A DNA stretch of 63,697 nucleotides, the filler included, from Calcarisporiella thermophila CBS 279.70 (taxonomy: Eukaryota; Fungi; Calcarisporiellomycota): NCBI RefSeq assembly GCF_041956535.1. It is 5 parts of 5 records of this genome, joined end to end, with 100 filler letters (N's around TTAATTAATTAA, not from the genome) between each part and the next. Parts side by side here need not be neighbours in the genome. Positions count along the whole stretch, not along the records: positions 1 to 28,423 come from NW_027192194.1; 4 more parts are not named here. One strand, given 5' to 3'. A program made the translations under genes and the position numbers. Positions 948 through 18,004 of the stretch are shown here, piece after piece; within the stretch, counting starts at the first letter, position 1; each line of letters opens with the position of its first letter. The notes under the pieces were generated by a model. That model was not told where the DNA came from and searched no databases. It worked only from the letters and a program-made list of their open reading frames with translations.

Positions 948-2859
948 TTGATGAACACCACTTCACCTGACTCACCACTTCCTCCATTGCCAATAACCAA
1001 TAATCCAGCTCTCATCGCCCATGGAATCTGCATGTTTTTCTCTACTGGGATCGCCCTCCCCATATGCATGCTGATTGGAGAGCAAGGCGCGCGTTTCCGG
1101 TTGCCTGTCGCAATAGGTGGCGCGATCATTGGTGCGATTGGATTTGGGCTAGGATTTGTTGAAAAATTAAATTCGAGTGGAGTAAACGCAACGGCATCAA
1201 ATGTGTCATTAAATGAGGTACAGGCATCTAGCAGCGCAGCGTTGGGATGGCATGCTGTCCTTGGCTATGCTGTACTCGGTCTTGTGCTCGTGCGGATAGT
1301 CGCGTGGATGCTCACAAACCGAGAAGATCGTGAGCTATTTGCTTTCTACCGCCGCATATCATCCCTAGTTCCTCTTATTTCGGCATTGCTCCTTGCACTC
1401 ATATATATTCAAGTTGGTCTCGGCGTAGTACTTTCTCTCAATGGCTGCATCGCTGGTGAAGGATGTTTTAGTCCGCTGGTCGGAGGAATGTTTATGCTTG
1501 TGTATGGGGCAGCTATAGTGGGTCATCTCTTTGGTGCTTTAACGATACCACATGGATGGTGGACACCTGAAATAGTAGAGGGTATAATTATTACTGTGTT
1601 GGGGATTGTGAATGCTTTGCGGCCGAGGGTCGAATTCTTAAAAGAGCCGCACACTTACTTGGTAATTACTTTTACTTTCATTCCCACTCATATGTTGGAC
1701 CCCCTTTGCTAACGTTTCACCTTGCCACTAGAATCTACGCTACTCCTGGATGGGCATCGTTTGGTGTTTTGGTGGCATTCTATCCCTGCTTTTCTCCGTC
1801 AAATTCTTTCCGATACCTCATTTTTTAAGACATCGTAACCCTATTCCTGCTCTTGTGTTACTTGTCACCGGCACAGCTTGTGCCCAGGCTCTAGGCGATA
1901 CAATCCCGGATGTGATATCCCGATTTTGGGGGGGCTGCCTACAGTTTGGAGGTCTTGCTCAACTAATACATGTAGCTGTACGTAATGAAGATTTTGGCAT
2001 TGATTCATACTCAACTGGCAACGGTAGATGCAGCAGCGGAAATGGTGGAAGCGTTAGCCAGGCTGTTGCCCATATTTCTGCATTACTTGTTGCACTGTCA
2101 GTCGGTGCAGCTGGAATAACTTGGATCGCATCGATGTCATCGCTACTTCATGTGTCCGAGCAATATATTCATGATCCGCCAACGCTCATCCAAATACTTG
2201 CTGCACTTGCATTTGGATGGGCTGTATATGTAGTATTACTTTTTTCTCTTACTCTTTGCAATTCTCCGCTGGCTCAGCAATATGCTCGAACCTCCACTTC
2301 TCCAACGTCTGCAGGGGCGGACCAACTGAATGAGGAAGTAGGCGGGCTATTGCCAAGTGAATACCGTGCTTATCGGAGGAGTAGGGCAAGCAGTGGGCAA
2401 TACTATCCAAACTTTCCTTCAGGAGGGGTAGGAATTGGTGCGAACGGCATGAACGGCACCAATGAATACGCGAATGGTGGAATAGGTCGTTCTGCTTCAG
2501 CCGGTTCGAAGCGTGACTCTTCACATTCTGGCAGTGGCGCAAGTGCAAATTTCAATAGCCTCAACACAAACGGAAACGGGAGCACCGGAGCGGGTGGATG
2601 GATAGTGGGACGGAGCAATCCTTCGGCTGGGCCCATACCACCCTCGAAGCGGAGTAGCATATTATTTACATCAAGCCCAACAAAGGATATTGATTTGGGA
2701 AGAGAAATTGAATTGGCAGGATTGTTAGTAGAAGAGAGTGAAGGAGAGAATGATGAAGAGAATGGTGAAAACGAGGCGGTCAATGAACTGGAAGATGTAG
2801 ATTTAGGGTATATGAGAGGACGAGGGCGAGAGCAGAAGCACTTACGTAGCCCGAGCTAA
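948..2859 (+). CDS. YTP1-like multi-pass membrane protein with low-complexity C-terminal tail (2 exons)
   Basis: ORFs 948-1712 and 1750-2859 join in frame through GT-AG intron 1662-1731; many TM segments; motifs AHGICMFFS..I.LPI.M and RNPIPALVLLVTG resemble the fungal Ytp1 family. Confidence 0.7.
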
Positions 2860-11549: not shown

Positions 11550-13094
11550 TTATTTTACAGTGACATTGGCGGCAATAAACCAGGCCCAACTGGTAGCCAT
11601 AAGCGATAAAATCAGAGTGACGCTGATGATAGAGAGAAGGCGGGGCGACCGAGGTTTTTTCGTTTCATCACTAGATTCTGAGGCTTTTAGTGTCTCGAGA
11701 ATTAACTTACGCGCTTTCGTGGACACCTCCATGATGCGATGGTTGTAGACGCGGTCGTAGAGCCAATATAAGACACAGGAGATGAAAGCTAGTATCGCCA
11801 CTACAAAAAGCATAAGGAGAGCATGGTCATAGCGCCCCCCATCTGCGTCCTGTAGGTAGCCGATAAGCAGATTTGAAATGACCGTGCCAGTGCTGAACAC
11901 TGCTTTGTCGATGCCGGTCCCGGAACCGACATACTCTTGAGGGAGGGCGAGCGAGATGGTAGAGCCAAGCGCCACGGGAACGACTGCCATAGAGATGGAA
12001 AAAAGAAGCAGTGCAAAAATAACAATGGCTCCTTTCGTCAACAAAAGTAGAAGGAGCGCGATCATCAGAAAACCTCCACATAATACAAGCAACGTCATGC
12101 GATGCCCATAACGGTCCATCCAACCGCCCACCATGGGCGAAATAATAACTGGCACTACTAGCGACACACTTGCAATCAAAGACGCCTGTGACTCAGACGG
12201 GCTATAGCGTTGTTGGACGAGCTCAGTGAGAGAGCCGAGCAACGGGTTCCAACTGGCACCGAAAAAAACCATTGTCAGTGGAACAAACCAGTAACCTGCG
12301 GGGAATCGCAGGATATTGCGAAGAGAAAATGAGCGCTTTTGCTGCGCGGAAATGTCTTTCGTTCCCAGAGAGTATAGGATGACGGCATAGGTTGCAGTGG
12401 CCAAGCAACTGAGCAGACACACCCCGAAAGCTACCCAAACCACGACATTGTAGCGTCCCGCTGCCTCCTTCAGGGGGATGGCTACCACCTGCGCTACGAA
12501 GCCGCTGAGATTGCTTGTGGCAATGAATACTCCGAAGGCAAGGCTGAGGGCAGTACCTCGAAACCAGCGCGCAAGGATAGTCTTCTGTGCCACCAGTGTA
12601 ACCCCTGAGCCCATTCCGTGTAGTATGCGGCCCACAGTCATTAGTGCAAACAACCGCGTCTCGGACGCAATCGCAATGCACAAATTTGCCAGTGCTACCG
12701 AGCAAGTTGATGCTACGGCCACCGGGAGTGGCCCGAATCGGTCCATAAGAATCCCTCCCACCATGGGCATAAAAGTGCCCATCAGGAACACGGCCGACTG
12801 TGCAATACCATATTGCGTATTATTGATATCAAGAGCCTCTTTGAACGAACCCTTGAGCACGTAGAGCGTCTGTCCTGAGTATGCGCCGCCGGCACAGAAA
12901 AGCACCACTGTGACTAAAATCAGCAACTTCACAGCGTTAGGTGGGTTCACCTCCTTATTTTCACTTCTCTTCTCGCTTGAAGAGACCATTCCGGTCTCAA
13001 CAGAGTCAACCTTTTCATCGTTTGTGCGTGTAGGAGGAGAAGAGTCAAAATGAGTTGAAGTTGAATTAGCATTCCCATTCATCATTGTCGTCAT
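11550..13094 (-). CDS. MFS transporter, MFSD1-like, intronless (paralog A)
   Basis: About 12 TM segments; motif A GGILMDRFG and repeat GGWMDRYGHR; GRILHGMGSGV..AQ..LARWFRG..L.LAFG resembles MFSD1; first ATG at 13094. Confidence 0.88.
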   Translation of the reverse strand: MTTMMNGNANSTSTHFDSSPPTRTNDEKVDSVETGMVSSSEKRSENKEVNPPNAVKLLILVTVVLFCAGGAYSGQTLYVLKGSFKEALDINNTQYGIAQSAVFLMGTFMPMVGGILMDRFGPLPVAVASTCSVALANLCIAIASETRLFALMTVGRILHGMGSGVTLVAQKTILARWFRGTALSLAFGVFIATSNLSGFVAQVVAIPLKEAAGRYNVVVWVAFGVCLLSCLATATYAVILYSLGTKDISAQQKRSFSLRNILRFPAGYWFVPLTMVFFGASWNPLLGSLTELVQQRYSPSESQASLIASVSLVVPVIISPMVGGWMDRYGHRMTLLVLCGGFLMIALLLLLLTKGAIVIFALLLFSISMAVVPVALGSTISLALPQEYVGSGTGIDKAVFSTGTVISNLLIGYLQDADGGRYDHALLMLFVVAILAFISCVLYWLYDRVYNHRIMEVSTKARKLILETLKASESSDETKKPRSPRLLSIISVTLILSLMATSWAWFIAANVTVK

Positions 13095-13328
13095 TGTCGA
13101 GATGCTTCCTAGGGTGGAGCATCCAGCACAGGGGCTAGAGAGAGGAGGGGGAGAAAGGCTTGGACCTTTGAACAAAGCGAAAACAAAACAAAACAAAGGT
13201 CACGATGAAAACAATAGTTGTTTCCCGCTTTTCAGCTAACAAAACATGATACGACCTTTGTTAGAAGAATTCCTAGTAGTTTTGCGCTACTCTTTACTCA
13301 TACGATTCCATTCCAACTCCGACGAACC

Positions 13329-13660
13329 CTATCAGATTCAGGATGCGGCAATATGATGAAAATGCTTTTGCACCGTTACACAATCGGGCATAAGTAAGCC
13401 CATGATGATCTATTATCAAATCAAGATTTGGTTTATGATAAGCATACTAATAAGAAATTAAATGTTGCAGAGCTATTGGCAGCAATAACCGGAGTAGCAA
13501 TTTTGAACCAACCCGCTTGTATTATGGACAAGCTGGCGGGGTTCCGGATGGGAAGTGGGATGATGTTTGCAATGGAGTTTTAGGAAAGACAGGTATCCTG
13601 ACAACACAACCGATATTTAACTCAATGAGTTTCAAAGTTTCCGTAAGAGGCTATCTGATT
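13329..13660 (-). promoter_or_regulatory. Candidate iron-responsive GATA boxes in divergent MFS/NIS promoter
   Basis: ATCTGATAG (13329-13337) and ATCAGATAG (13651-13659) on the minus strand, each one mismatch from the SreA consensus ATCWGATAA; TTATCA at 13413 and TGATAA at 13436. Confidence 0.5.
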
Positions 13661-13770
13661 TTTTATTTATTGTCTCAACTTTCCTGTTCTCGACTTTAAC
13701 TTCTTTTTACTTTTCATCCTACTTCATTCTTCGCATTGTACGCGTTCTTATCTTGTGAAAATCAATCAAT

Positions 13771-15702
13771 ATGGCTCCCATCACTGTCATACCCGTCAGT
13801 CTTGACGCTCTTAACGTCAAACATAAAGACCTGGCCACAGCAAATGGTATCAACCCCCATCCTAACGCAAAAGCAAATAGCAAAGACGTCGCTCCGGCCG
13901 TTGCTCCCGAATACCTTACCAAAGCACGCAACAACAACATGGCTCGCCTGCTCGCCTGCCTTGTCAACGAGGGTTGGGGCAATGCCTACATCGCACCACA
14001 CGCTCCTGTTGGAGCAACAACAAGTAGCCCCAGTGGACGTTGGATGCTAATTGCAAGTAGTCTTACCACACCTCCTCCCGCTCAGAGCCTCGAGACATGT
14101 CTGTGGGTGCCGCTCCGCAACATGCCCGTGGTGCAGCAGAACTCGGACTCAGAGTGGCCGAGAGTGACGTTGCTAGATCAAAACGAGTTTGCTTTCCCCG
14201 TATATCGCACAAGTAAGGTGACCCACCCGGCCGACGCAACGGAGCCGATGGAGGCCGTTTTGGATTCAATCGAGGCGCTAAAGATGATGCAAAAGTGGCA
14301 CAACTGGTCCCAGCCCGAGGTGGACCAGCTCGCTTCTCAGCTTGCAAGTTCAATACGCAACCAGGCAGTTGCGTACACGCGCCGTAGTCCGCTCCCCCAA
14401 CTTGGCAAAGCAACCGCCATGGATTGGGAACTGAGCTTGGTTGAGGGTCACCCCACGCACCCGATGAACCTTGCTCTTCACGCTGTCGATCCTTTGCCTC
14501 CGCTACATGATGTGACTCCCCTGTTGCGCCCCACCCTGCGCTTTTGCGTTGTGCCTCGCGACGAAGTGATCGTGTGCGGTGAGTTTGAAAAGACACTTGC
14601 TCCGTTGCTGATCGATGCAATTTACGATCGTGAGAACGAGGTGGCTGTGCCTGTTCATGAGGTGCAATTGCCCAACGTCCTCTCTCGCTTCCCCAATGCT
14701 CGGCTCCTCGATGTCGCTGTTCCCGCCACTGCGCAATCTTCGATTCGCACAGTGGTACCCGACACACTTCCCTCCATTTCCCTAAAATTGCCGCTGGGTA
14801 TCGTCATGTGCACATCACTACGCACCCTCTCCAAATACTCTGCTTATCAGGGTCCAGCTTTGGTGCCTTTTCTTCACAACGTCATTGATGACCCGGATCT
14901 GCTTTTGCCTGTGGACGAGTTTGCAAGCTGCTTGCCGCGACACCCTAGCAATGCCGTTGCCAAGCATATGACCTGCGTGCTCCGAAGAGATGTGGACACC
15001 CTTGTGGCGCCCCGCGGTGAAATTGCATTGACCGCGGCTGCGTTGATTGAGCGTGATGTAGACGAGCAGTACGTGTTGACCAAGGTTTTCAATCTCGACA
15101 CGTTCACAAAACGTAAAGCTTGGTTACAACGCTATATCCAGCTCGCCATCAAAGCATATATTTCGCCATTGAAATATGGCGTTGCTTTTGAAGGTCATCT
15201 GCAGAATTCGCTCCCTCGTTTCAAGCGTTGCCCCGAAACTGGAGAATGGGTTCTTGTTGGATTTGCGTACAGAGATTTTGGCGGTATTGAGGTGCATGCC
15301 CCCACGCTCCGCGAGACAACGGGCCTCACCTTGGATGTTCTCGACGAGAAGGCGTTTGTATTTTCCGAGAAGATGTCCTCTTTGTATAGTCTCGTGTTCC
15401 ATGCGCTCTTCCAGTGTCATTTACACTTGATTATCCGCGCCTCCGACATGCACTACAATGGCGAGGGCTGGCGTATGGTACGTGAGGAGCTTGAGGCCAC
15501 TCTCCCTCGTGATAGCGACATCTATCGTCACTATTTGCAGAGCCCTACTGCGGATTGGAAGTGCTATATTGGCATGAAACTTCAGGGCGCTGAGATCGAC
15601 ATTATGTATTCCAAGATCACCAATCTGATTGTCTACGACCGACCCTCCGACGAGCTTGCTGAGCAGCAGGATGACGCCCATGTATATACAGTGTCTCGTT
15701 AA
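13771..15702 (+). CDS. NRPS-independent siderophore (NIS) synthetase, IucA/IucC family, rhizoferrin synthetase (Rfs)-like, intronless
   Basis: 643 aa; ARLLACLVNEG, WELSLVEGHPTHPM, VPVHEVQ, AQSSIRTV, LKLPLGI..TS.RTLS, FEGHLQN, RDFGG; C-terminal ferric-reductase-like domain region. Confidence 0.92.
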   Translation: MAPITVIPVSLDALNVKHKDLATANGINPHPNAKANSKDVAPAVAPEYLTKARNNNMARLLACLVNEGWGNAYIAPHAPVGATTSSPSGRWMLIASSLTTPPPAQSLETCLWVPLRNMPVVQQNSDSEWPRVTLLDQNEFAFPVYRTSKVTHPADATEPMEAVLDSIEALKMMQKWHNWSQPEVDQLASQLASSIRNQAVAYTRRSPLPQLGKATAMDWELSLVEGHPTHPMNLALHAVDPLPPLHDVTPLLRPTLRFCVVPRDEVIVCGEFEKTLAPLLIDAIYDRENEVAVPVHEVQLPNVLSRFPNARLLDVAVPATAQSSIRTVVPDTLPSISLKLPLGIVMCTSLRTLSKYSAYQGPALVPFLHNVIDDPDLLLPVDEFASCLPRHPSNAVAKHMTCVLRRDVDTLVAPRGEIALTAAALIERDVDEQYVLTKVFNLDTFTKRKAWLQRYIQLAIKAYISPLKYGVAFEGHLQNSLPRFKRCPETGEWVLVGFAYRDFGGIEVHAPTLRETTGLTLDVLDEKAFVFSEKMSSLYSLVFHALFQCHLHLIIRASDMHYNGEGWRMVREELEATLPRDSDIYRHYLQSPTADWKCYIGMKLQGAEIDIMYSKITNLIVYDRPSDELAEQQDDAHVYTVSR

Positions 15703-16468
15703 TTTAATATCCTCTGATTTTAATATCCATTTGTATATATATTTATTCTATTGTTATGTCTTGTTTCGAGGTAGTAGAAATAAATTTACACGATCTTTTT
15801 CTTAAACTTTCACTACGAGCACAAACTTCGCTTAGAGTTCTAGCACAAAAAAAATTTTTTATATTCTGAAACTAAGGTTCTTTCACATGGGTAGGCCTAT
15901 CTCTTGGCTGCCCCACATCTAAACGTAAATAAATCCAGGTTCAAAATTAATCTCTTCGATGGGCCTGCTCTTCCTCAAAAGGAGAAAAGTTTGACCTTAT
16001 CGATCTTGGACAAGCATATAACTTTTGGACGGAAAAACAAAGTAAAAACAAGGCCATTGTTTTAGCTGAAAATATGGTGTTGTTAGGGGCTTATTTAGAA
16101 TATTCTTATAACAGTGCAGCTTGTTTATCGAGTTAAGCACTAGATCTTTTTCCTTCCTCTCACCACAATCGTACGATAAGTGAGAGCCGAAACCAATCAA
16201 ATCCCAGTCATACATCAGTTAAGTCGGTGAAAATAATAACAAAGATCAGGCCACAAATTGTTCAAGCGCGGTTAAAAAATATTAAAAACACAGCGCTCCG
16301 ATGCGATCCCGACTCGCCTGGAACATAAAATACCACGCGCTGCCTCCTACGACCCCTTGTTTCCGCAAGTGCTGTCTGCATTCACATCGCCTCCATCCCT
16401 AATCCACTCTAGTCCTCCTCCTTCTTCTCTCTCATTCCTCCAAATCCATTCCCCATTTCATATTCATC

Positions 16469-18004
16469 ATGAGCCGACAGCCTAATGGTGCCGAGTCCGG
16501 CTCGGATACCGCTAACTCTCTCTCTCAAGAAAAGCCTCAGCTCATCAAGGAGGAGGACGGCACATACCCAACAGAGGAGGAACGAAAGGTCCCGTTGAAA
16601 TTTAAAATACTAGCCCTCCTGTGTGCTATCTTCTTCTCGGCAGGAAGTCACTTTGCCACGAATGCATTGAACTCTCTCAAAACAGCGCTCAAGACAGAAC
16701 TGGCAATCGACAATACCCAATATGGAGCAGCACAAGCTGCCCTCTATCTCATGAACACGTTGATCCCGGTGATGGGTGGCCTGATGATTGACCACTTTGG
16801 CACTATCAAAGGCTCCTTTGTATCTTCGACTTTAGTACTGGGAGGCAATATTCTGCTTCTCATTTCCGCATACGTTCGCAGTTATGGGCTTCTTGTGGCG
16901 GGACGTGTAATGCATGGATTCGGCTCTAGCATTATTATTGTAGCCCAGCAGACCATTTTGGGCCGGTGGTTCCGTGGGAGTGCTCTTGCCACTGCCCTTG
17001 GAATTCAGACCGCATCTACCAATCTGTTCGCTTACATTGCCCAGGTTTCTATGGTGCCACTCAAGGACTCTGGCTGGTGGGGCAACGGCTTTTGGCTCTC
17101 CGTTTCCATTTGCTTCGTCAGCTGGCTCACCGTGCTTATTTACGGATTTGTGCTGTACCGTTCTGGCGGCGAGCAAATTGGAAACCGACCCAAGCGGCCT
17201 CTTTCATTGCGCGATATCGTTCATCTTCCTGCCGCATTTTGGTGGATCCCGCTTATTATCTTTTTCTTTGGAGGCAGTACCTCACCTTTCCTTGGTTCCG
17301 TTATTGAGTTTGTGGGCAAGCGCTATGGGATGAAGGAACAGGTTGCTTCCGTCAACGGCAGTGTTTCGCTTATTGTACCTATTGTATTGTCGCCTTTGAT
17401 GGGCGGATTCCTTGATCGGTTTGGTCATCGCACTACGATGGTGATCTTTGCAAGCTTCTTGCTGATACTCAATTATGCACTACTGGGCTACTCTTGGGCT
17501 CATCCTGTTGCTCCGCTTGTGCTATTCTCCATTGCCAATGCCGTTGGGCCCGTCGCATACAACTCGGCTGTAGCCCTCATCTTGCATCCAGACCTCGTGG
17601 GCACCGGCTGTGGGCTTGTGCGTGCTGCCTTTAGCGTTAGTGTGTCAATGGTGCACTTGCTGACCGGCAATCTTCAGGACGCCTATGGCGGATCCTACGA
17701 TGGAGTCATGATCATGTTTTTAATTTTGTCTATCCTGACAACCTTAGTCGCCATTGGATTTGCCCTTTACGACCGCGCTTACTACTTCGGTATGCTCAAT
17801 GCCTCTGTTGCTCGGCGTCTTCGTATCATCGACACTAAGCGTGATCAGCTTCCGAACACCAGCAGTGCAAAGAGCAAGGTGCCTCTGCGCTCCTACATTA
17901 TCTGCGGCATTTTCCTCATCTTTGTTCTCGTTGCTTGGGCTTGGTTCATCTGGTCGCTTGTCGAGAATCCTACCAAGACTTTTGCTCGCTACAAATTCAA
18001 TTAG
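16469..18004 (+). CDS. MFS transporter, MFSD1-like, intronless (paralog B)
   Basis: 511 aa; clear paralog of the 11550-13094 gene (LxIxNTQYG.AQ, GRVMHGFGS, WFRGSALA.A.G, GGFLDRFGHR, LQDAYGGSYD). Confidence 0.88.
   Translation: MSRQPNGAESGSDTANSLSQEKPQLIKEEDGTYPTEEERKVPLKFKILALLCAIFFSAGSHFATNALNSLKTALKTELAIDNTQYGAAQAALYLMNTLIPVMGGLMIDHFGTIKGSFVSSTLVLGGNILLLISAYVRSYGLLVAGRVMHGFGSSIIIVAQQTILGRWFRGSALATALGIQTASTNLFAYIAQVSMVPLKDSGWWGNGFWLSVSICFVSWLTVLIYGFVLYRSGGEQIGNRPKRPLSLRDIVHLPAAFWWIPLIIFFFGGSTSPFLGSVIEFVGKRYGMKEQVASVNGSVSLIVPIVLSPLMGGFLDRFGHRTTMVIFASFLLILNYALLGYSWAHPVAPLVLFSIANAVGPVAYNSAVALILHPDLVGTGCGLVRAAFSVSVSMVHLLTGNLQDAYGGSYDGVMIMFLILSILTTLVAIGFALYDRAYYFGMLNASVARRLRIIDTKRDQLPNTSSAKSKVPLRSYIICGIFLIFVLVAWAWFIWSLVENPTKTFARYKFN

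What the first reader, a model, noticed from the sequence alone, without database searches (positions are those of the whole stretch)
11550..18004. Intronless MFS-NIS-MFS cassette: NIS synthetase flanked by two paralogous MFSD1-like transporters (candidate dedicated carboxylate-metallophore synthesis and transport system)
Seen: an IucA/IucC synthetase sits head-to-head with one MFS gene (676-bp shared promoter) and is followed by a second, clearly paralogous MFS gene. All three lack introns and look more GC-rich than the intron-containing neighbours. Known: Mucorales make rhizoferrin (citrate plus putrescine) with one NIS enzyme, Rfs. Characterised fungal siderophore transporters belong to the SIT/ARN family, whereas MFSD1 is a lysosomal dipeptide transporter. 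To my knowledge a dedicated fungal rhizoferrin transporter has not been defined. Inference: these two MFSD1-like paralogs were recruited as an exporter and an importer (or vacuolar transporter) for the NIS product, forming a self-contained three-gene module.
Basis: partly seen in the sequence, partly recalled or inferred. Interest (0 to 1): 0.85.

Follow-up and report, generated by a model that had tools for sequence, protein, structure and literature searches.

The report
Siderophore synthetase flanked by two transporters
In the fungus Calcarisporiella thermophila, a divergent iron-chelator (NIS) synthetase gene lies between two related MFSD1-like membrane transporter genes; this looks like a small make-and-transport gene cluster, but the arrangement was found in this genome only and nothing yet shows the three genes work together.

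Summary
There are three uninterrupted ORFs: MFS-A (11550-13094, minus strand), an IucA/IucC+FhuF NIS synthetase (13771-15702, plus) and MFS-B (16469-18004, plus). MFS-A and the NIS share a 676-bp divergent promoter. The two MFS proteins are 37% identical and MFSD1-like.

The genome is Calcarisporiella thermophila, not a Mucorales species. It has three NIS genes. The two unclustered ones belong to the Mucorales/Basidiomycota (Rfs-type) clade. The window gene is a deep-branching third paralog that keeps every family-invariant residue.

MFS-A, MFS-B and one Neoconidiobolus protein form a strongly supported (99/98) intronless subclade, separate from five intron-containing paralogs in the same genome. 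Both window proteins have lost the TM5 arginine that the other fungal MFSD1-like sequences compared here (and mouse MFSD1) keep.

Linkage is not conserved. No MFSD1-like gene lies near 12 fungal/plant NIS loci, 79 prokaryotic ones (78 bacterial, 1 archaeal) or the two own-genome paralogs. However, NIS genes repeatedly sit beside other, unrelated transporters (DHA1-MFS/EamA/MatE, UPF0014, Fe-type ABC). No RNA data were listed.

Verdict: a plausible lineage-specific metallophore synthesis-and-transport cluster (about 50%). It is a new variant of a known kind, with function unproven.

The parts
11550..13094 (-). MFS-A: intronless 514-aa MFSD1-like major-facilitator transporter (ORF open up to a TTG at 13196; first ATG at 13094). 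It is the long-branch member of the MFS-A/MFS-B/Neoconidiobolus subclade.
13095..13770 (.). 676-bp AT-rich (GC 0.40) divergent promoter shared by MFS-A and the NIS gene. It holds two exact ATCWGATA (iron-GATA-type) sites at 13330 and 13652 and five WGATAR sites. The statistical support is inconclusive.
13771..15702 (+). NIS synthetase: intronless, 643 aa, with IucA_IucC (284-426) and FhuF-like (450-593) domains. All 28 columns invariant across 16 fungal, plant and bacterial relatives are kept. It is a deep-branching paralog outside the Rfs-type clade.
15703..16468 (.). 766-bp spacer (GC 0.38) holding the 3' end region of the NIS gene and the promoter of MFS-B. It carries a 16-nt word (16057-16072) also found upstream of MFS-A (13229-13244) in the same orientation relative to each gene; this is not above chance.
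16469..18004 (+). MFS-B: intronless 511-aa MFSD1-like transporter, 45% identical over its full length to Neoconidiobolus thromboides P0173, including the extra C-terminal hydrophobic helix and tail.

Best explanation
This is a lineage-specific three-gene biosynthetic cluster of Calcarisporiella thermophila.

The central gene encodes an active NIS (IucA/IucC-type) synthetase. It most likely joins citrate to a diamine or amino compound, using ATP, to make a rhizoferrin-like polycarboxylate metallophore. It is a third, divergent paralog and not the Rfs ortholog, so the product may differ from rhizoferrin.

The two flanking genes encode members of a specialised, intronless subclade of the fungal MFSD1-like major-facilitator family with an altered substrate cavity. 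They are inferred to move the NIS product or its metal complex across membranes. One would secrete it. The other would retrieve it or sequester it in the vacuole.

Shown here: the anatomy, the family memberships, the intact invariant residues, the distinct MFS subclade, and the loss of the conserved TM5 arginine. Inferred: that the three genes are co-regulated from the shared promoter, that the MFS substrate is the NIS product, and which MFS exports or imports.
For: 1. Tight adjacency with a 676-bp head-to-head promoter and a 766-bp spacer.
2. The genome has only 3 NIS loci and about 7-9 MFSD1-like loci in 28 Mb, and two of the MFSD1-like genes are the immediate neighbours of one NIS. My rough estimate, assuming about 10,000 genes, is about 5e-3 if the second copy arose by local duplication and about 1e-6 if the two placements were independent.
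3. MFS-A, MFS-B and Neoconidiobolus P0173 form a 99/98 clade separate from five own-genome paralogs and from Allomyces MFSD1.
4. Those three genes are intronless, whereas the other paralogs are interrupted.
5. Both window MFS proteins replace the arginine equivalent to mouse MFSD1 R181 with Asn. Every other fungal homolog compared keeps this arginine. The clade also changes the positions equivalent to D60, Q396 and N397 (residue roles from PMC11252000).
6. The NIS keeps all 28 invariant columns, and a family profile hits AsbB, DfoC, AcsD, IucA and IucC.
7. NIS genes are repeatedly linked to non-homologous transporters elsewhere. Examples are DHA1-MFS x2, EamA and MatE in Fennellomyces; UPF0014 in two Entomophthoromycotina; an FbpBC-like ABC system plus EamA in Mycoavidus; ABC/MRP in Armillaria (PMC10700112); and MFS LbtB/FigB in bacterial rhizoferrin loci (PMC7857480).
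8. The three genes share a similar GC3 (0.55-0.58), above most neighbours.
Against: No conserved linkage was found. None of 12 eukaryotic NIS loci from other organisms, 79 prokaryotic NIS loci (78 bacterial, 1 archaeal) or the two own-genome NIS paralogs has an MFSD1-like gene within the flanks read. The MFS-B ortholog in Neoconidiobolus is unlinked to that species' NIS genes. No genome from the same order was available, so only very deep comparisons were possible.

No expression data were listed. The only characterised member of the MFS family is a lysosomal dipeptide uniporter. The window proteins have lost the one conserved arginine that binds a carboxylate in MFSD1, which does not obviously favour a polycarboxylate substrate. 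The GATA-site enrichment in the promoter is weak, and the same motif is absent from the FTR1 promoter of the same genome.
Confidence: 0.5

Rival explanations
1. The adjacency has no functional link. An MFSD1-like gene duplicated locally, and the NIS gene lies between the copies through neutral rearrangement. The MFS proteins are vacuolar or lysosomal small-solute (for example peptide) transporters unrelated to the NIS product.
For: Linkage is absent in every other NIS locus examined and for the Neoconidiobolus MFS-B ortholog. MFSD1's known substrates are dipeptides (PMC11252000). An A+B sister relationship, meaning a local duplication, is not rejected (p-AU 0.49). Published work describes Mucoromycotina NIS loci as single genes (PMC8070225).
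Against: At 37% identity the two copies are old, yet both remain immediate neighbours of the NIS, one of them through a compact divergent promoter. The subclade has a modified cavity, and neither window protein keeps any of the three residues critical for dipeptide binding in MFSD1. Transporter genes recur next to NIS genes in several lineages.
Confidence: 0.27
2. The cluster is functional, but the MFS proteins do not move a siderophore in and out of the cell. Instead they supply a precursor (citrate, a diamine or an amino acid or peptide-like amine) to the enzyme's compartment, or store the product in the vacuole. Alternatively the NIS product is not an iron chelator at all.
For: The NIS is a divergent third paralog outside the Rfs-type clade, while two Rfs-type genes exist elsewhere in the genome. 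MFSD1 relatives act on endolysosomal membranes (PMC11252000). MFS-B has an N-terminal acidic di-leucine-like EKPQLI motif (read). No DHA-type antiporter motif, typical of siderophore exporters, is seen (reading).
Against: There is no direct evidence for any substrate. The di-leucine-like motif is short and expected by chance in several percent of N-termini. Every characterised NIS enzyme hit by the family profile makes a siderophore.
Confidence: 0.18
3. The three-gene block was acquired as a unit by horizontal transfer from a Zoopagomycota-like donor. This would explain the lack of introns, the higher GC, and why the best homologs of both the NIS and MFS-B lie in Entomophthoromycotina.
For: In the 82-row quick tree the NIS groups with Neoconidiobolus, Entomophthora and Selaginella sequences (SH-aLRT 98). 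The best MFS-B homolog is from Neoconidiobolus. The orthologs there are also intronless.
Against: Identities are only 35-45%, so any transfer would be ancient. The grouping collapses to a polytomy in the careful tree. The genes are unlinked in Neoconidiobolus. GC3 lies within the genome's own range. The MFS search found only five proteins, so 'best hit' carries little weight.
Confidence: 0.05

Closest known systems
Rhizoferrin synthetase Rfs of Rhizopus delemar and the Mucorales NIS clade
   Same: Same IucA_IucC + FhuF architecture and the same fungal NIS family at 31-34% identity. A single enzyme is expected to be sufficient for a citrate-diamine product (PMC7857480).
   Different: The window NIS is not an ortholog. 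It lies outside the 95/98 clade that holds the Mucorales, Bifiguratus and Basidiomycota sequences and the genome's two other NIS genes. Rfs itself was not in the tree. Its clade is inferred from the Mucorales sequences.
Bacterial rhizoferrin loci (Legionella lbtA-lbtB, Francisella figA-figB/fsl, Ralstonia pickettii NIS-MFS)
   Same: The same logic: one NIS synthetase is encoded next to MFS transporter(s) needed for siderophore production or secretion (PMC7857480).
   Different: Those MFS proteins are relatives of the efflux pump MdtG, not MFSD1-like. tblastn found no MFSD1-like gene within 7 kb of 79 prokaryotic NIS loci (78 bacterial, 1 archaeal). The bacterial genes are operons, whereas these are eukaryotic genes with separate promoters.
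MFSD1-GLMP lysosomal dipeptide uniporter (PDB 8r8q)
   Same: It is the best solved sequence relative of both MFS proteins. The fold is the same 12-helix MFS type, and the Atlas structural matches have TM-scores of 0.73-0.86.
   Different: Neither window protein keeps D60, E150 or R181 (N/Q, S/G, N/N). There is an extra C-terminal hydrophobic helix after a hydrophilic linker. A GLMP partner was not looked for. The genomic context is a secondary-metabolite-type locus.
Fungal NIS gene clusters with transporters (Armillaria/Physalacriaceae clusters; Fennellomyces locus found here)
   Same: An NIS gene lies beside transporter genes in a fungal genome (PMC10700112).
   Different: The transporter families differ: ABC/MRP in Armillaria, and DHA1/Qdr2-like MFS, EamA and MatE in Fennellomyces. 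None is MFSD1-like.
SIT/ARN siderophore-iron transporters of fungi
   Same: They are also MFS proteins, and they take up siderophore-iron chelates, which is the role proposed for one of the two genes.
   Different: This is a different MFS family that acts on hydroxamate siderophores. MFS-A and MFS-B are classified as MFSD1-like by sequence and predicted structure. No direct comparison with SIT sequences was run.

Membership tests
NIS (IucA/IucC) siderophore synthetases | IucA_IucC catalytic domain followed by a FhuF-like C-terminal domain | tested here: met
   Pfam PF04183 at 70 bits and PF06276 at 45 bits, both above the curated cut-offs. A family profile hits AsbB at 5e-43, and also DfoC, AcsD, AlcC, IucA, IucC and DesD.
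NIS (IucA/IucC) siderophore synthetases | Retention of the family-invariant (ATP- and substrate-binding) residues | tested here: met
   All 28 columns invariant across 16 fungal, plant and bacterial members are present in the window protein, for example H230, R326, K339, R351, E474, H476, Q478, N479, R501 and D502. Assigning individual residues to catalytic roles rests on my own knowledge of AcsD/AsbB and was not tested.
Rfs-type (Mucorales) rhizoferrin synthetase orthogroup | Placement inside the clade holding the Mucorales NIS sequences | tested here: not met
   The careful tree places the C18 and C19 paralogs in the 95/98 clade with Bifiguratus, Mucorales and Basidiomycota. The window NIS lies outside it in an unresolved basal set.
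Type A' NIS subclass (citrate plus amine or alcohol) | Phylogenetic grouping with FslA, LbtA, SfaB, SfaD and Rfs | not tested
The assignment is inferred from papers that place fungal NIS enzymes in type A' (PMC10700112).
MFSD1 family of MFS transporters | MFS fold with MFSD1 as the closest characterised relative | tested here: met
   PF07690. 8r8q is the top solved hit for both proteins, and the only one for MFS-B. The Atlas feature and structure neighbours are MFSD1 clusters.
MFSD1 family of MFS transporters | Dipeptide-coordinating residues D60, E150 and R181 (mouse numbering; PMC11252000) | tested here: not met
   MFS-B has N65, S154 and N185. MFS-A has Q, G and N. The other fungal homologs also lack D60 and E150 (H and G/M) but keep R181. 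So this is a member of the family by descent, not a demonstrated dipeptide transporter.
MFSD1 family of MFS transporters | Obligate accessory subunit GLMP and a lysosomal di-leucine sorting motif | tested here: inconclusive
   GLMP was not searched for. MFS-B has an EKPQLI motif near its N-terminus and MFS-A has none. The fungal proteins carry an extra C-terminal helix.
Fungal biosynthetic gene cluster | Physical clustering of a backbone enzyme with transporter genes | tested here: met
   The genes are immediate neighbours with a 676-bp divergent promoter and a 766-bp spacer.
Fungal biosynthetic gene cluster | Conserved linkage in related genomes | tested here: not met
   No MFSD1-like sequence lies near the NIS loci of Mycoemilia, Neoconidiobolus, Tieghemiomyces, Selaginella, Entomophthora, Fennellomyces, Zychaea, Phascolomyces, Bifiguratus or Funneliformis, a Logan contig, the own C18 and C19 paralogs, or 79 prokaryotic loci (78 bacterial, 1 archaeal). 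All of these comparisons are at phylum-level distance.
Fungal biosynthetic gene cluster | Co-regulation of the member genes (here by iron) | not testable with these tools
   No RNA run was listed for this sequence. Promoter motif counts are inconclusive.

The most novel reading that the evidence does not exclude
The MFS-A/MFS-B/Neoconidiobolus subclade of MFSD1-like proteins is a previously unrecognised family of carboxylate-metallophore transporters in early-diverging fungi. In Calcarisporiella one copy would secrete the product of a non-Rfs NIS synthetase, possibly a new citrate-based chelator. The other copy would take up or store the product or its metal complex. This would give the MFSD1 family a second substrate class and provide the first dedicated transporter candidates for polycarboxylate siderophores in fungi.
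Probability: 0.3. Interest if true: 0.7.

Novelty: new variant of a known kind. Interest (0 to 1): 0.45.

Why it matters
Zygomycete-type fungi secrete polycarboxylate siderophores, and rhizoferrin contributes to Mucorales iron acquisition. The papers I read name no dedicated exporter or importer for it, and genome surveys describe these NIS loci as single genes (PMC8070225).

A locus that physically couples an NIS enzyme to two transporters offers concrete, testable candidates. It also suggests that a family known only as a lysosomal dipeptide uniporter may carry other substrates.

The comparative result matters too. NIS genes have picked up different, unrelated transporters in different lineages: MFSD1-like here, DHA1-MFS/EamA/MatE in Fennellomyces, UPF0014 in Entomophthoromycotina and an Fe-type ABC system in Mycoavidus. 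This points to repeated independent assembly of mini-clusters and gives several further candidates.

The evidence comes from one genome, without expression data or conservation, so the value is as a lead and not a discovery.

Tried and rejected
- The word-indexed homolog search with MFS-A returned only itself and two weak bacterial hits, because of the candidate cap. It did not even find MFS-B. Restricting the MFS-B search to residues 55-200 found five proteins. The taxonomic range of the MFS subclade is therefore unknown.
- RNA evidence: none was listed.
- Iron-regulator motif. There are two exact ATCWGATA sites in the 676-bp promoter and three in the whole 28-kb window. The window-wide count is at chance level. 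The FTR1 gene of the same genome has none within about 3 kb upstream. WGATAR density is similar in other AT-rich spacers. I rejected this as evidence.
- Shared promoter word (16 nt, 88% match). Equally good matches occur inside coding sequence, so it is not above chance.
- Foreign origin from composition. GC3 of 0.55-0.58 lies within the genome's range of 0.38-0.74, so I rejected this.
- PF13434 (SidA-type) search of the own genome gave weak, non-specific hits, and the control rings in 12 of 14 genomes. It is uninformative.
- The own-genome UPF0014 gene on contig C21 is not beside any NIS. It lies about 17 kb from an MFSD1-like paralog, so I claim no link.
- I first read the C21 paralog as intronless from its reported 'open frame'. 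ORF listing shows it is interrupted.
- The search for related loci with the 16-sequence alignment failed for lack of a conserved stretch. The 6-sequence alignment worked.
- The order of MFS-A, MFS-B and P0173 within their clade could not be resolved.
- Intron-containing paralogs were analysed HSP by HSP, in separate N-half and C-half trees.

Full report
**1. What is in the sequence**

The region 11550-18004 holds three long uninterrupted ORFs.
- The minus-strand ORF 11550-13196 is an MFS_1 protein (Pfam, 3.9e-36). Its first ATG is at 13094, giving 514 aa.
- 13771-15702 (+) encodes 643 aa with IucA_IucC (70 bits) and FhuF-like (45 bits) domains.
- 16469-18004 (+) is a second MFS_1 protein of 511 aa.

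The head-to-head spacer between MFS-A and the NIS gene is exactly 676 bp. The NIS to MFS-B spacer is 766 bp. Both are AT-rich, with GC 0.38-0.40.

The two MFS proteins align over their whole length at 37% identity, E 9e-116. Their best solved relative is MFSD1 (8r8q; E 6e-17 and 9e-22). The ESM Atlas places MFS-B among clusters named 'lysosomal dipeptide transporter MFSD1', with structural TM-scores of 0.73-0.86.

Flanking genes are ordinary and split by introns: G6PD, a CBM19 protein, S1/P1 nuclease, DUF1295, a BTB protein, UCH and a DUF2427/Ytp1 membrane protein.

GC3 of the trio is 0.55-0.58, against 0.38-0.48 for most neighbours. Other loci in the genome reach 0.69-0.74.

**2. The organism**

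One NIS homolog returned by the exhaustive search is XP_069248861 of Calcarisporiella thermophila. It lies on a contig of 672,666 bp, which is the length of contig C19 of the window's genome, and it matches that contig at about 100% in its exons. NCBI places this thermophile in its own phylum, Calcarisporiellomycota. It is not a Mucorales species. No closely related genome was reachable, so all synteny comparisons are very deep.

**3. The synthetase**

The genome has three NIS genes, on C4 (this window), C18 and C19.
- In a careful ML tree, C18 and C19 are sisters (100/99). They sit in a 95/98 clade with Bifiguratus, Mucorales (Spinellus, Fennellomyces, Zychaea, Phascolomyces) and Basidiomycota. 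This is the clade expected to contain Rfs.
- The window enzyme lies outside that clade. It is in an unresolved set with Entomophthoromycotina, Kickxellomycotina, Mortierellomycotina, Glomeromycotina and Selaginella sequences.
- A larger quick tree grouped it with Neoconidiobolus, Entomophthora and Selaginella (SH-aLRT 98).
- Its nearest relatives are only 35-42% identical.

The window enzyme retains all 28 columns invariant across 16 fungal, plant and bacterial members. A family profile hits the solved NIS enzymes AsbB, DfoC, AcsD, AlcC, IucA, IucC and DesD. I therefore read it as an active NIS synthetase, but as a divergent third paralog. Its product need not be rhizoferrin.

**4. The transporters**

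The genome holds at least seven clear MFSD1-like loci: two here, plus C15, C40, C21, C38 and C30. There are weaker hits on C2 and C29.

In trees built from single-exon matches, the C-terminal half places MFS-A, MFS-B and Neoconidiobolus thromboides P0173 in one clade (99/99). This clade is separate from the five other paralogs and from Allomyces MFSD1. A full-length tree repeats this result (99/98). The order within the trio is unresolved, and MFS-A has a long branch.

P0173 is 45% identical to MFS-B end to end, including the C-terminal tail. P0173 and the two window genes are intronless, while the other paralogs are interrupted.

I mapped the MFSD1 cavity residues from the cryo-EM paper (PMC11252000) through the HMMER alignment and a family alignment.
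- The fungal family as a whole lacks D60 and E150.
- It keeps the TM5 arginine (R181) in the sequences that cover that position (Allomyces, C15, C38, C30 and P0173; the C40 and C21 matches do not reach it).
- Both MFS-A and MFS-B have Asn at the R181 position.
- The subclade also differs at the positions equivalent to D60, Q396 and N397.

These are MFSD1 relatives by descent with a remodelled cavity. The substrate cannot be read from sequence. Loss of the arginine does not obviously favour a polycarboxylate.

All fungal members examined carry an extra hydrophobic helix at the extreme C-terminus.

**5. Is the linkage conserved?**

It is not, as far as could be sampled. I read 7-10 kb on each side (about 5 kb around the two own-genome paralogs, less where a contig ended) of these NIS genes:
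- Mycoemilia, Neoconidiobolus, Tieghemiomyces, Selaginella, Entomophthora, Fennellomyces, Zychaea, Phascolomyces, Bifiguratus and Funneliformis;
- one Logan contig;
- the two own-genome paralogs;
- 79 prokaryotic relatives (78 bacterial, 1 archaeal).

tblastn with MFS-A, MFS-B, P0173 and Allomyces MFSD1 found nothing in any of them. The Neoconidiobolus ortholog of MFS-B lies on a different scaffold from that species' NIS pair, with no NIS within 6-10 kb.

Other transporters do recur beside NIS genes:
- Fennellomyces has MFS-NIS-MFS-NIS-EamA-MatE, where the MFS genes are DHA1/Qdr2-like.
- Neoconidiobolus and Entomophthora have a UPF0014 (FetB-like) gene beside or near their NIS genes.
- Mycoavidus endosymbionts have an FbpBC-like ABC system and an EamA gene next to a fungal-type NIS.
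- Armillaria clusters carry ABC/MRP genes (PMC10700112).
- Bacterial rhizoferrin loci pair the synthetase with an MFS exporter (PMC7857480).

Recruitment of non-homologous transporters to NIS loci is therefore a repeated theme. This raises the prior that the Calcarisporiella arrangement is functional even though it is unique.

**6. Regulation**

No RNA run was listed. The divergent promoter has two of the window's three exact ATCWGATA sites. The window-wide count is at chance level. The FTR1 promoter of the same genome lacks the motif. A 16-nt word shared by the MFS-A and MFS-B upstream regions is no better than matches found within coding sequence. Co-regulation is therefore untested.

**7. 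Verdict**

The most likely reading (about 0.5) is a lineage-specific mini-cluster. In it, a divergent NIS synthetase makes a citrate-based metallophore, and two specialised MFSD1-like transporters move it or its metal complex.

The main rival (about 0.27) is neutral adjacency of locally duplicated vacuolar solute transporters. A third reading (about 0.18) keeps the functional link but assigns the transporters to precursor supply or vacuolar storage, or gives the NIS a non-iron product. Ancient block transfer (about 0.05) is not excluded, but it is not supported by the careful tree or by base composition.

Relative to what is known, this is a new variant of a known kind: an NIS synthetase paired with an MFS transporter, but with a transporter family never linked to siderophores. 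A literature search for MFSD1, fungi and siderophore returned no paper.

**Method notes.** Intron-containing paralogs were analysed exon match by exon match. The chance-adjacency figures are my own rough estimates and assume about 10,000 genes.

Noticed in passing
L024:2295-17971 (Fennellomyces sp. T-0311, JALLLT010000039.1): A Mucorales block of MFS(-), NIS(+), MFS(-), NIS(+), EamA(+), MatE(+). The MFS genes resemble yeast Qdr2 (DHA1) and are not MFSD1-like. It looks like a rhizoferrin-type synthesis and export cluster, and I did not find it described in the papers read.
   Followed up: partly
L020:4594-11746 (Neoconidiobolus thromboides) and L023:752-11635 (Entomophthora muscae): A UPF0014 (PF03649, FetB-like putative iron-export permease) gene lies between two NIS genes in Neoconidiobolus and 8 kb from an NIS gene in Entomophthora. 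This may be a conserved NIS-transporter linkage in Entomophthoromycotina.
   Followed up: partly
L022:10001-11809 (Selaginella moellendorffii scaffold GL377572.1): An intronless fungal-type NIS gene, the closest full-length relative of the window enzyme at 41-42% identity, sits among plant-type genes (protein kinase, NEMP, RINGv/MARCH6) on a 3.9-Mb plant scaffold. This suggests a fungus-to-lycophyte gene transfer.
   Followed up: no
L033-L039 (Mycoavidus cysteinexigens MAGs), e.g. L038:6800-13456: Endosymbionts of Mortierella carry a full-length NIS that is far closer to the fungal family (E 1e-66 to 1e-78) than any other prokaryotic hit (E 1e-20 or weaker). A 'Glomeribacter'-labelled protein (P0029/P0171) does the same. 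In L038 the gene lies next to an FbpBC-like ABC importer and an EamA transporter. This suggests host-symbiont gene exchange.
   Followed up: partly
window 12958-13094 and 16469-16600 (N-termini); C-terminal helices at MFS-A aa 486-504 and MFS-B aa 477-495: Fungal MFSD1-like proteins (MFS-A, MFS-B, Neoconidiobolus P0173, Allomyces) all have an extra, strongly hydrophobic C-terminal helix after a hydrophilic linker, which mouse MFSD1 lacks. It may stand in for the single-pass helix of the mammalian accessory subunit GLMP. MFS-B alone has an acidic di-leucine-like EKPQLI motif near its N-terminus.
   Followed up: partly
window 13229-13244 and 16057-16072: A 16-nt word (88% match) lies upstream of both MFS-A and MFS-B in the same orientation relative to each gene. 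It is not above chance by length alone.
   Followed up: partly
window 948-2859 (+): A membrane protein with DUF2427, weak cytochrome b561 and Ytp1-like matches lies about 8.7 kb from MFS-A. It is possibly a transmembrane electron-transfer (ferric-reductase-like) protein. No link to the cluster was shown.
   Followed up: no
G000:C18:174072-175412 and G000:C19:431888-433147 (L017, L018): Two further NIS genes of the same genome are 55% identical to each other and belong to the Rfs-type clade. Each appears split by an intron near the 5' end, and no transporter gene was recognisable within about 5 kb.
   Followed up: partly
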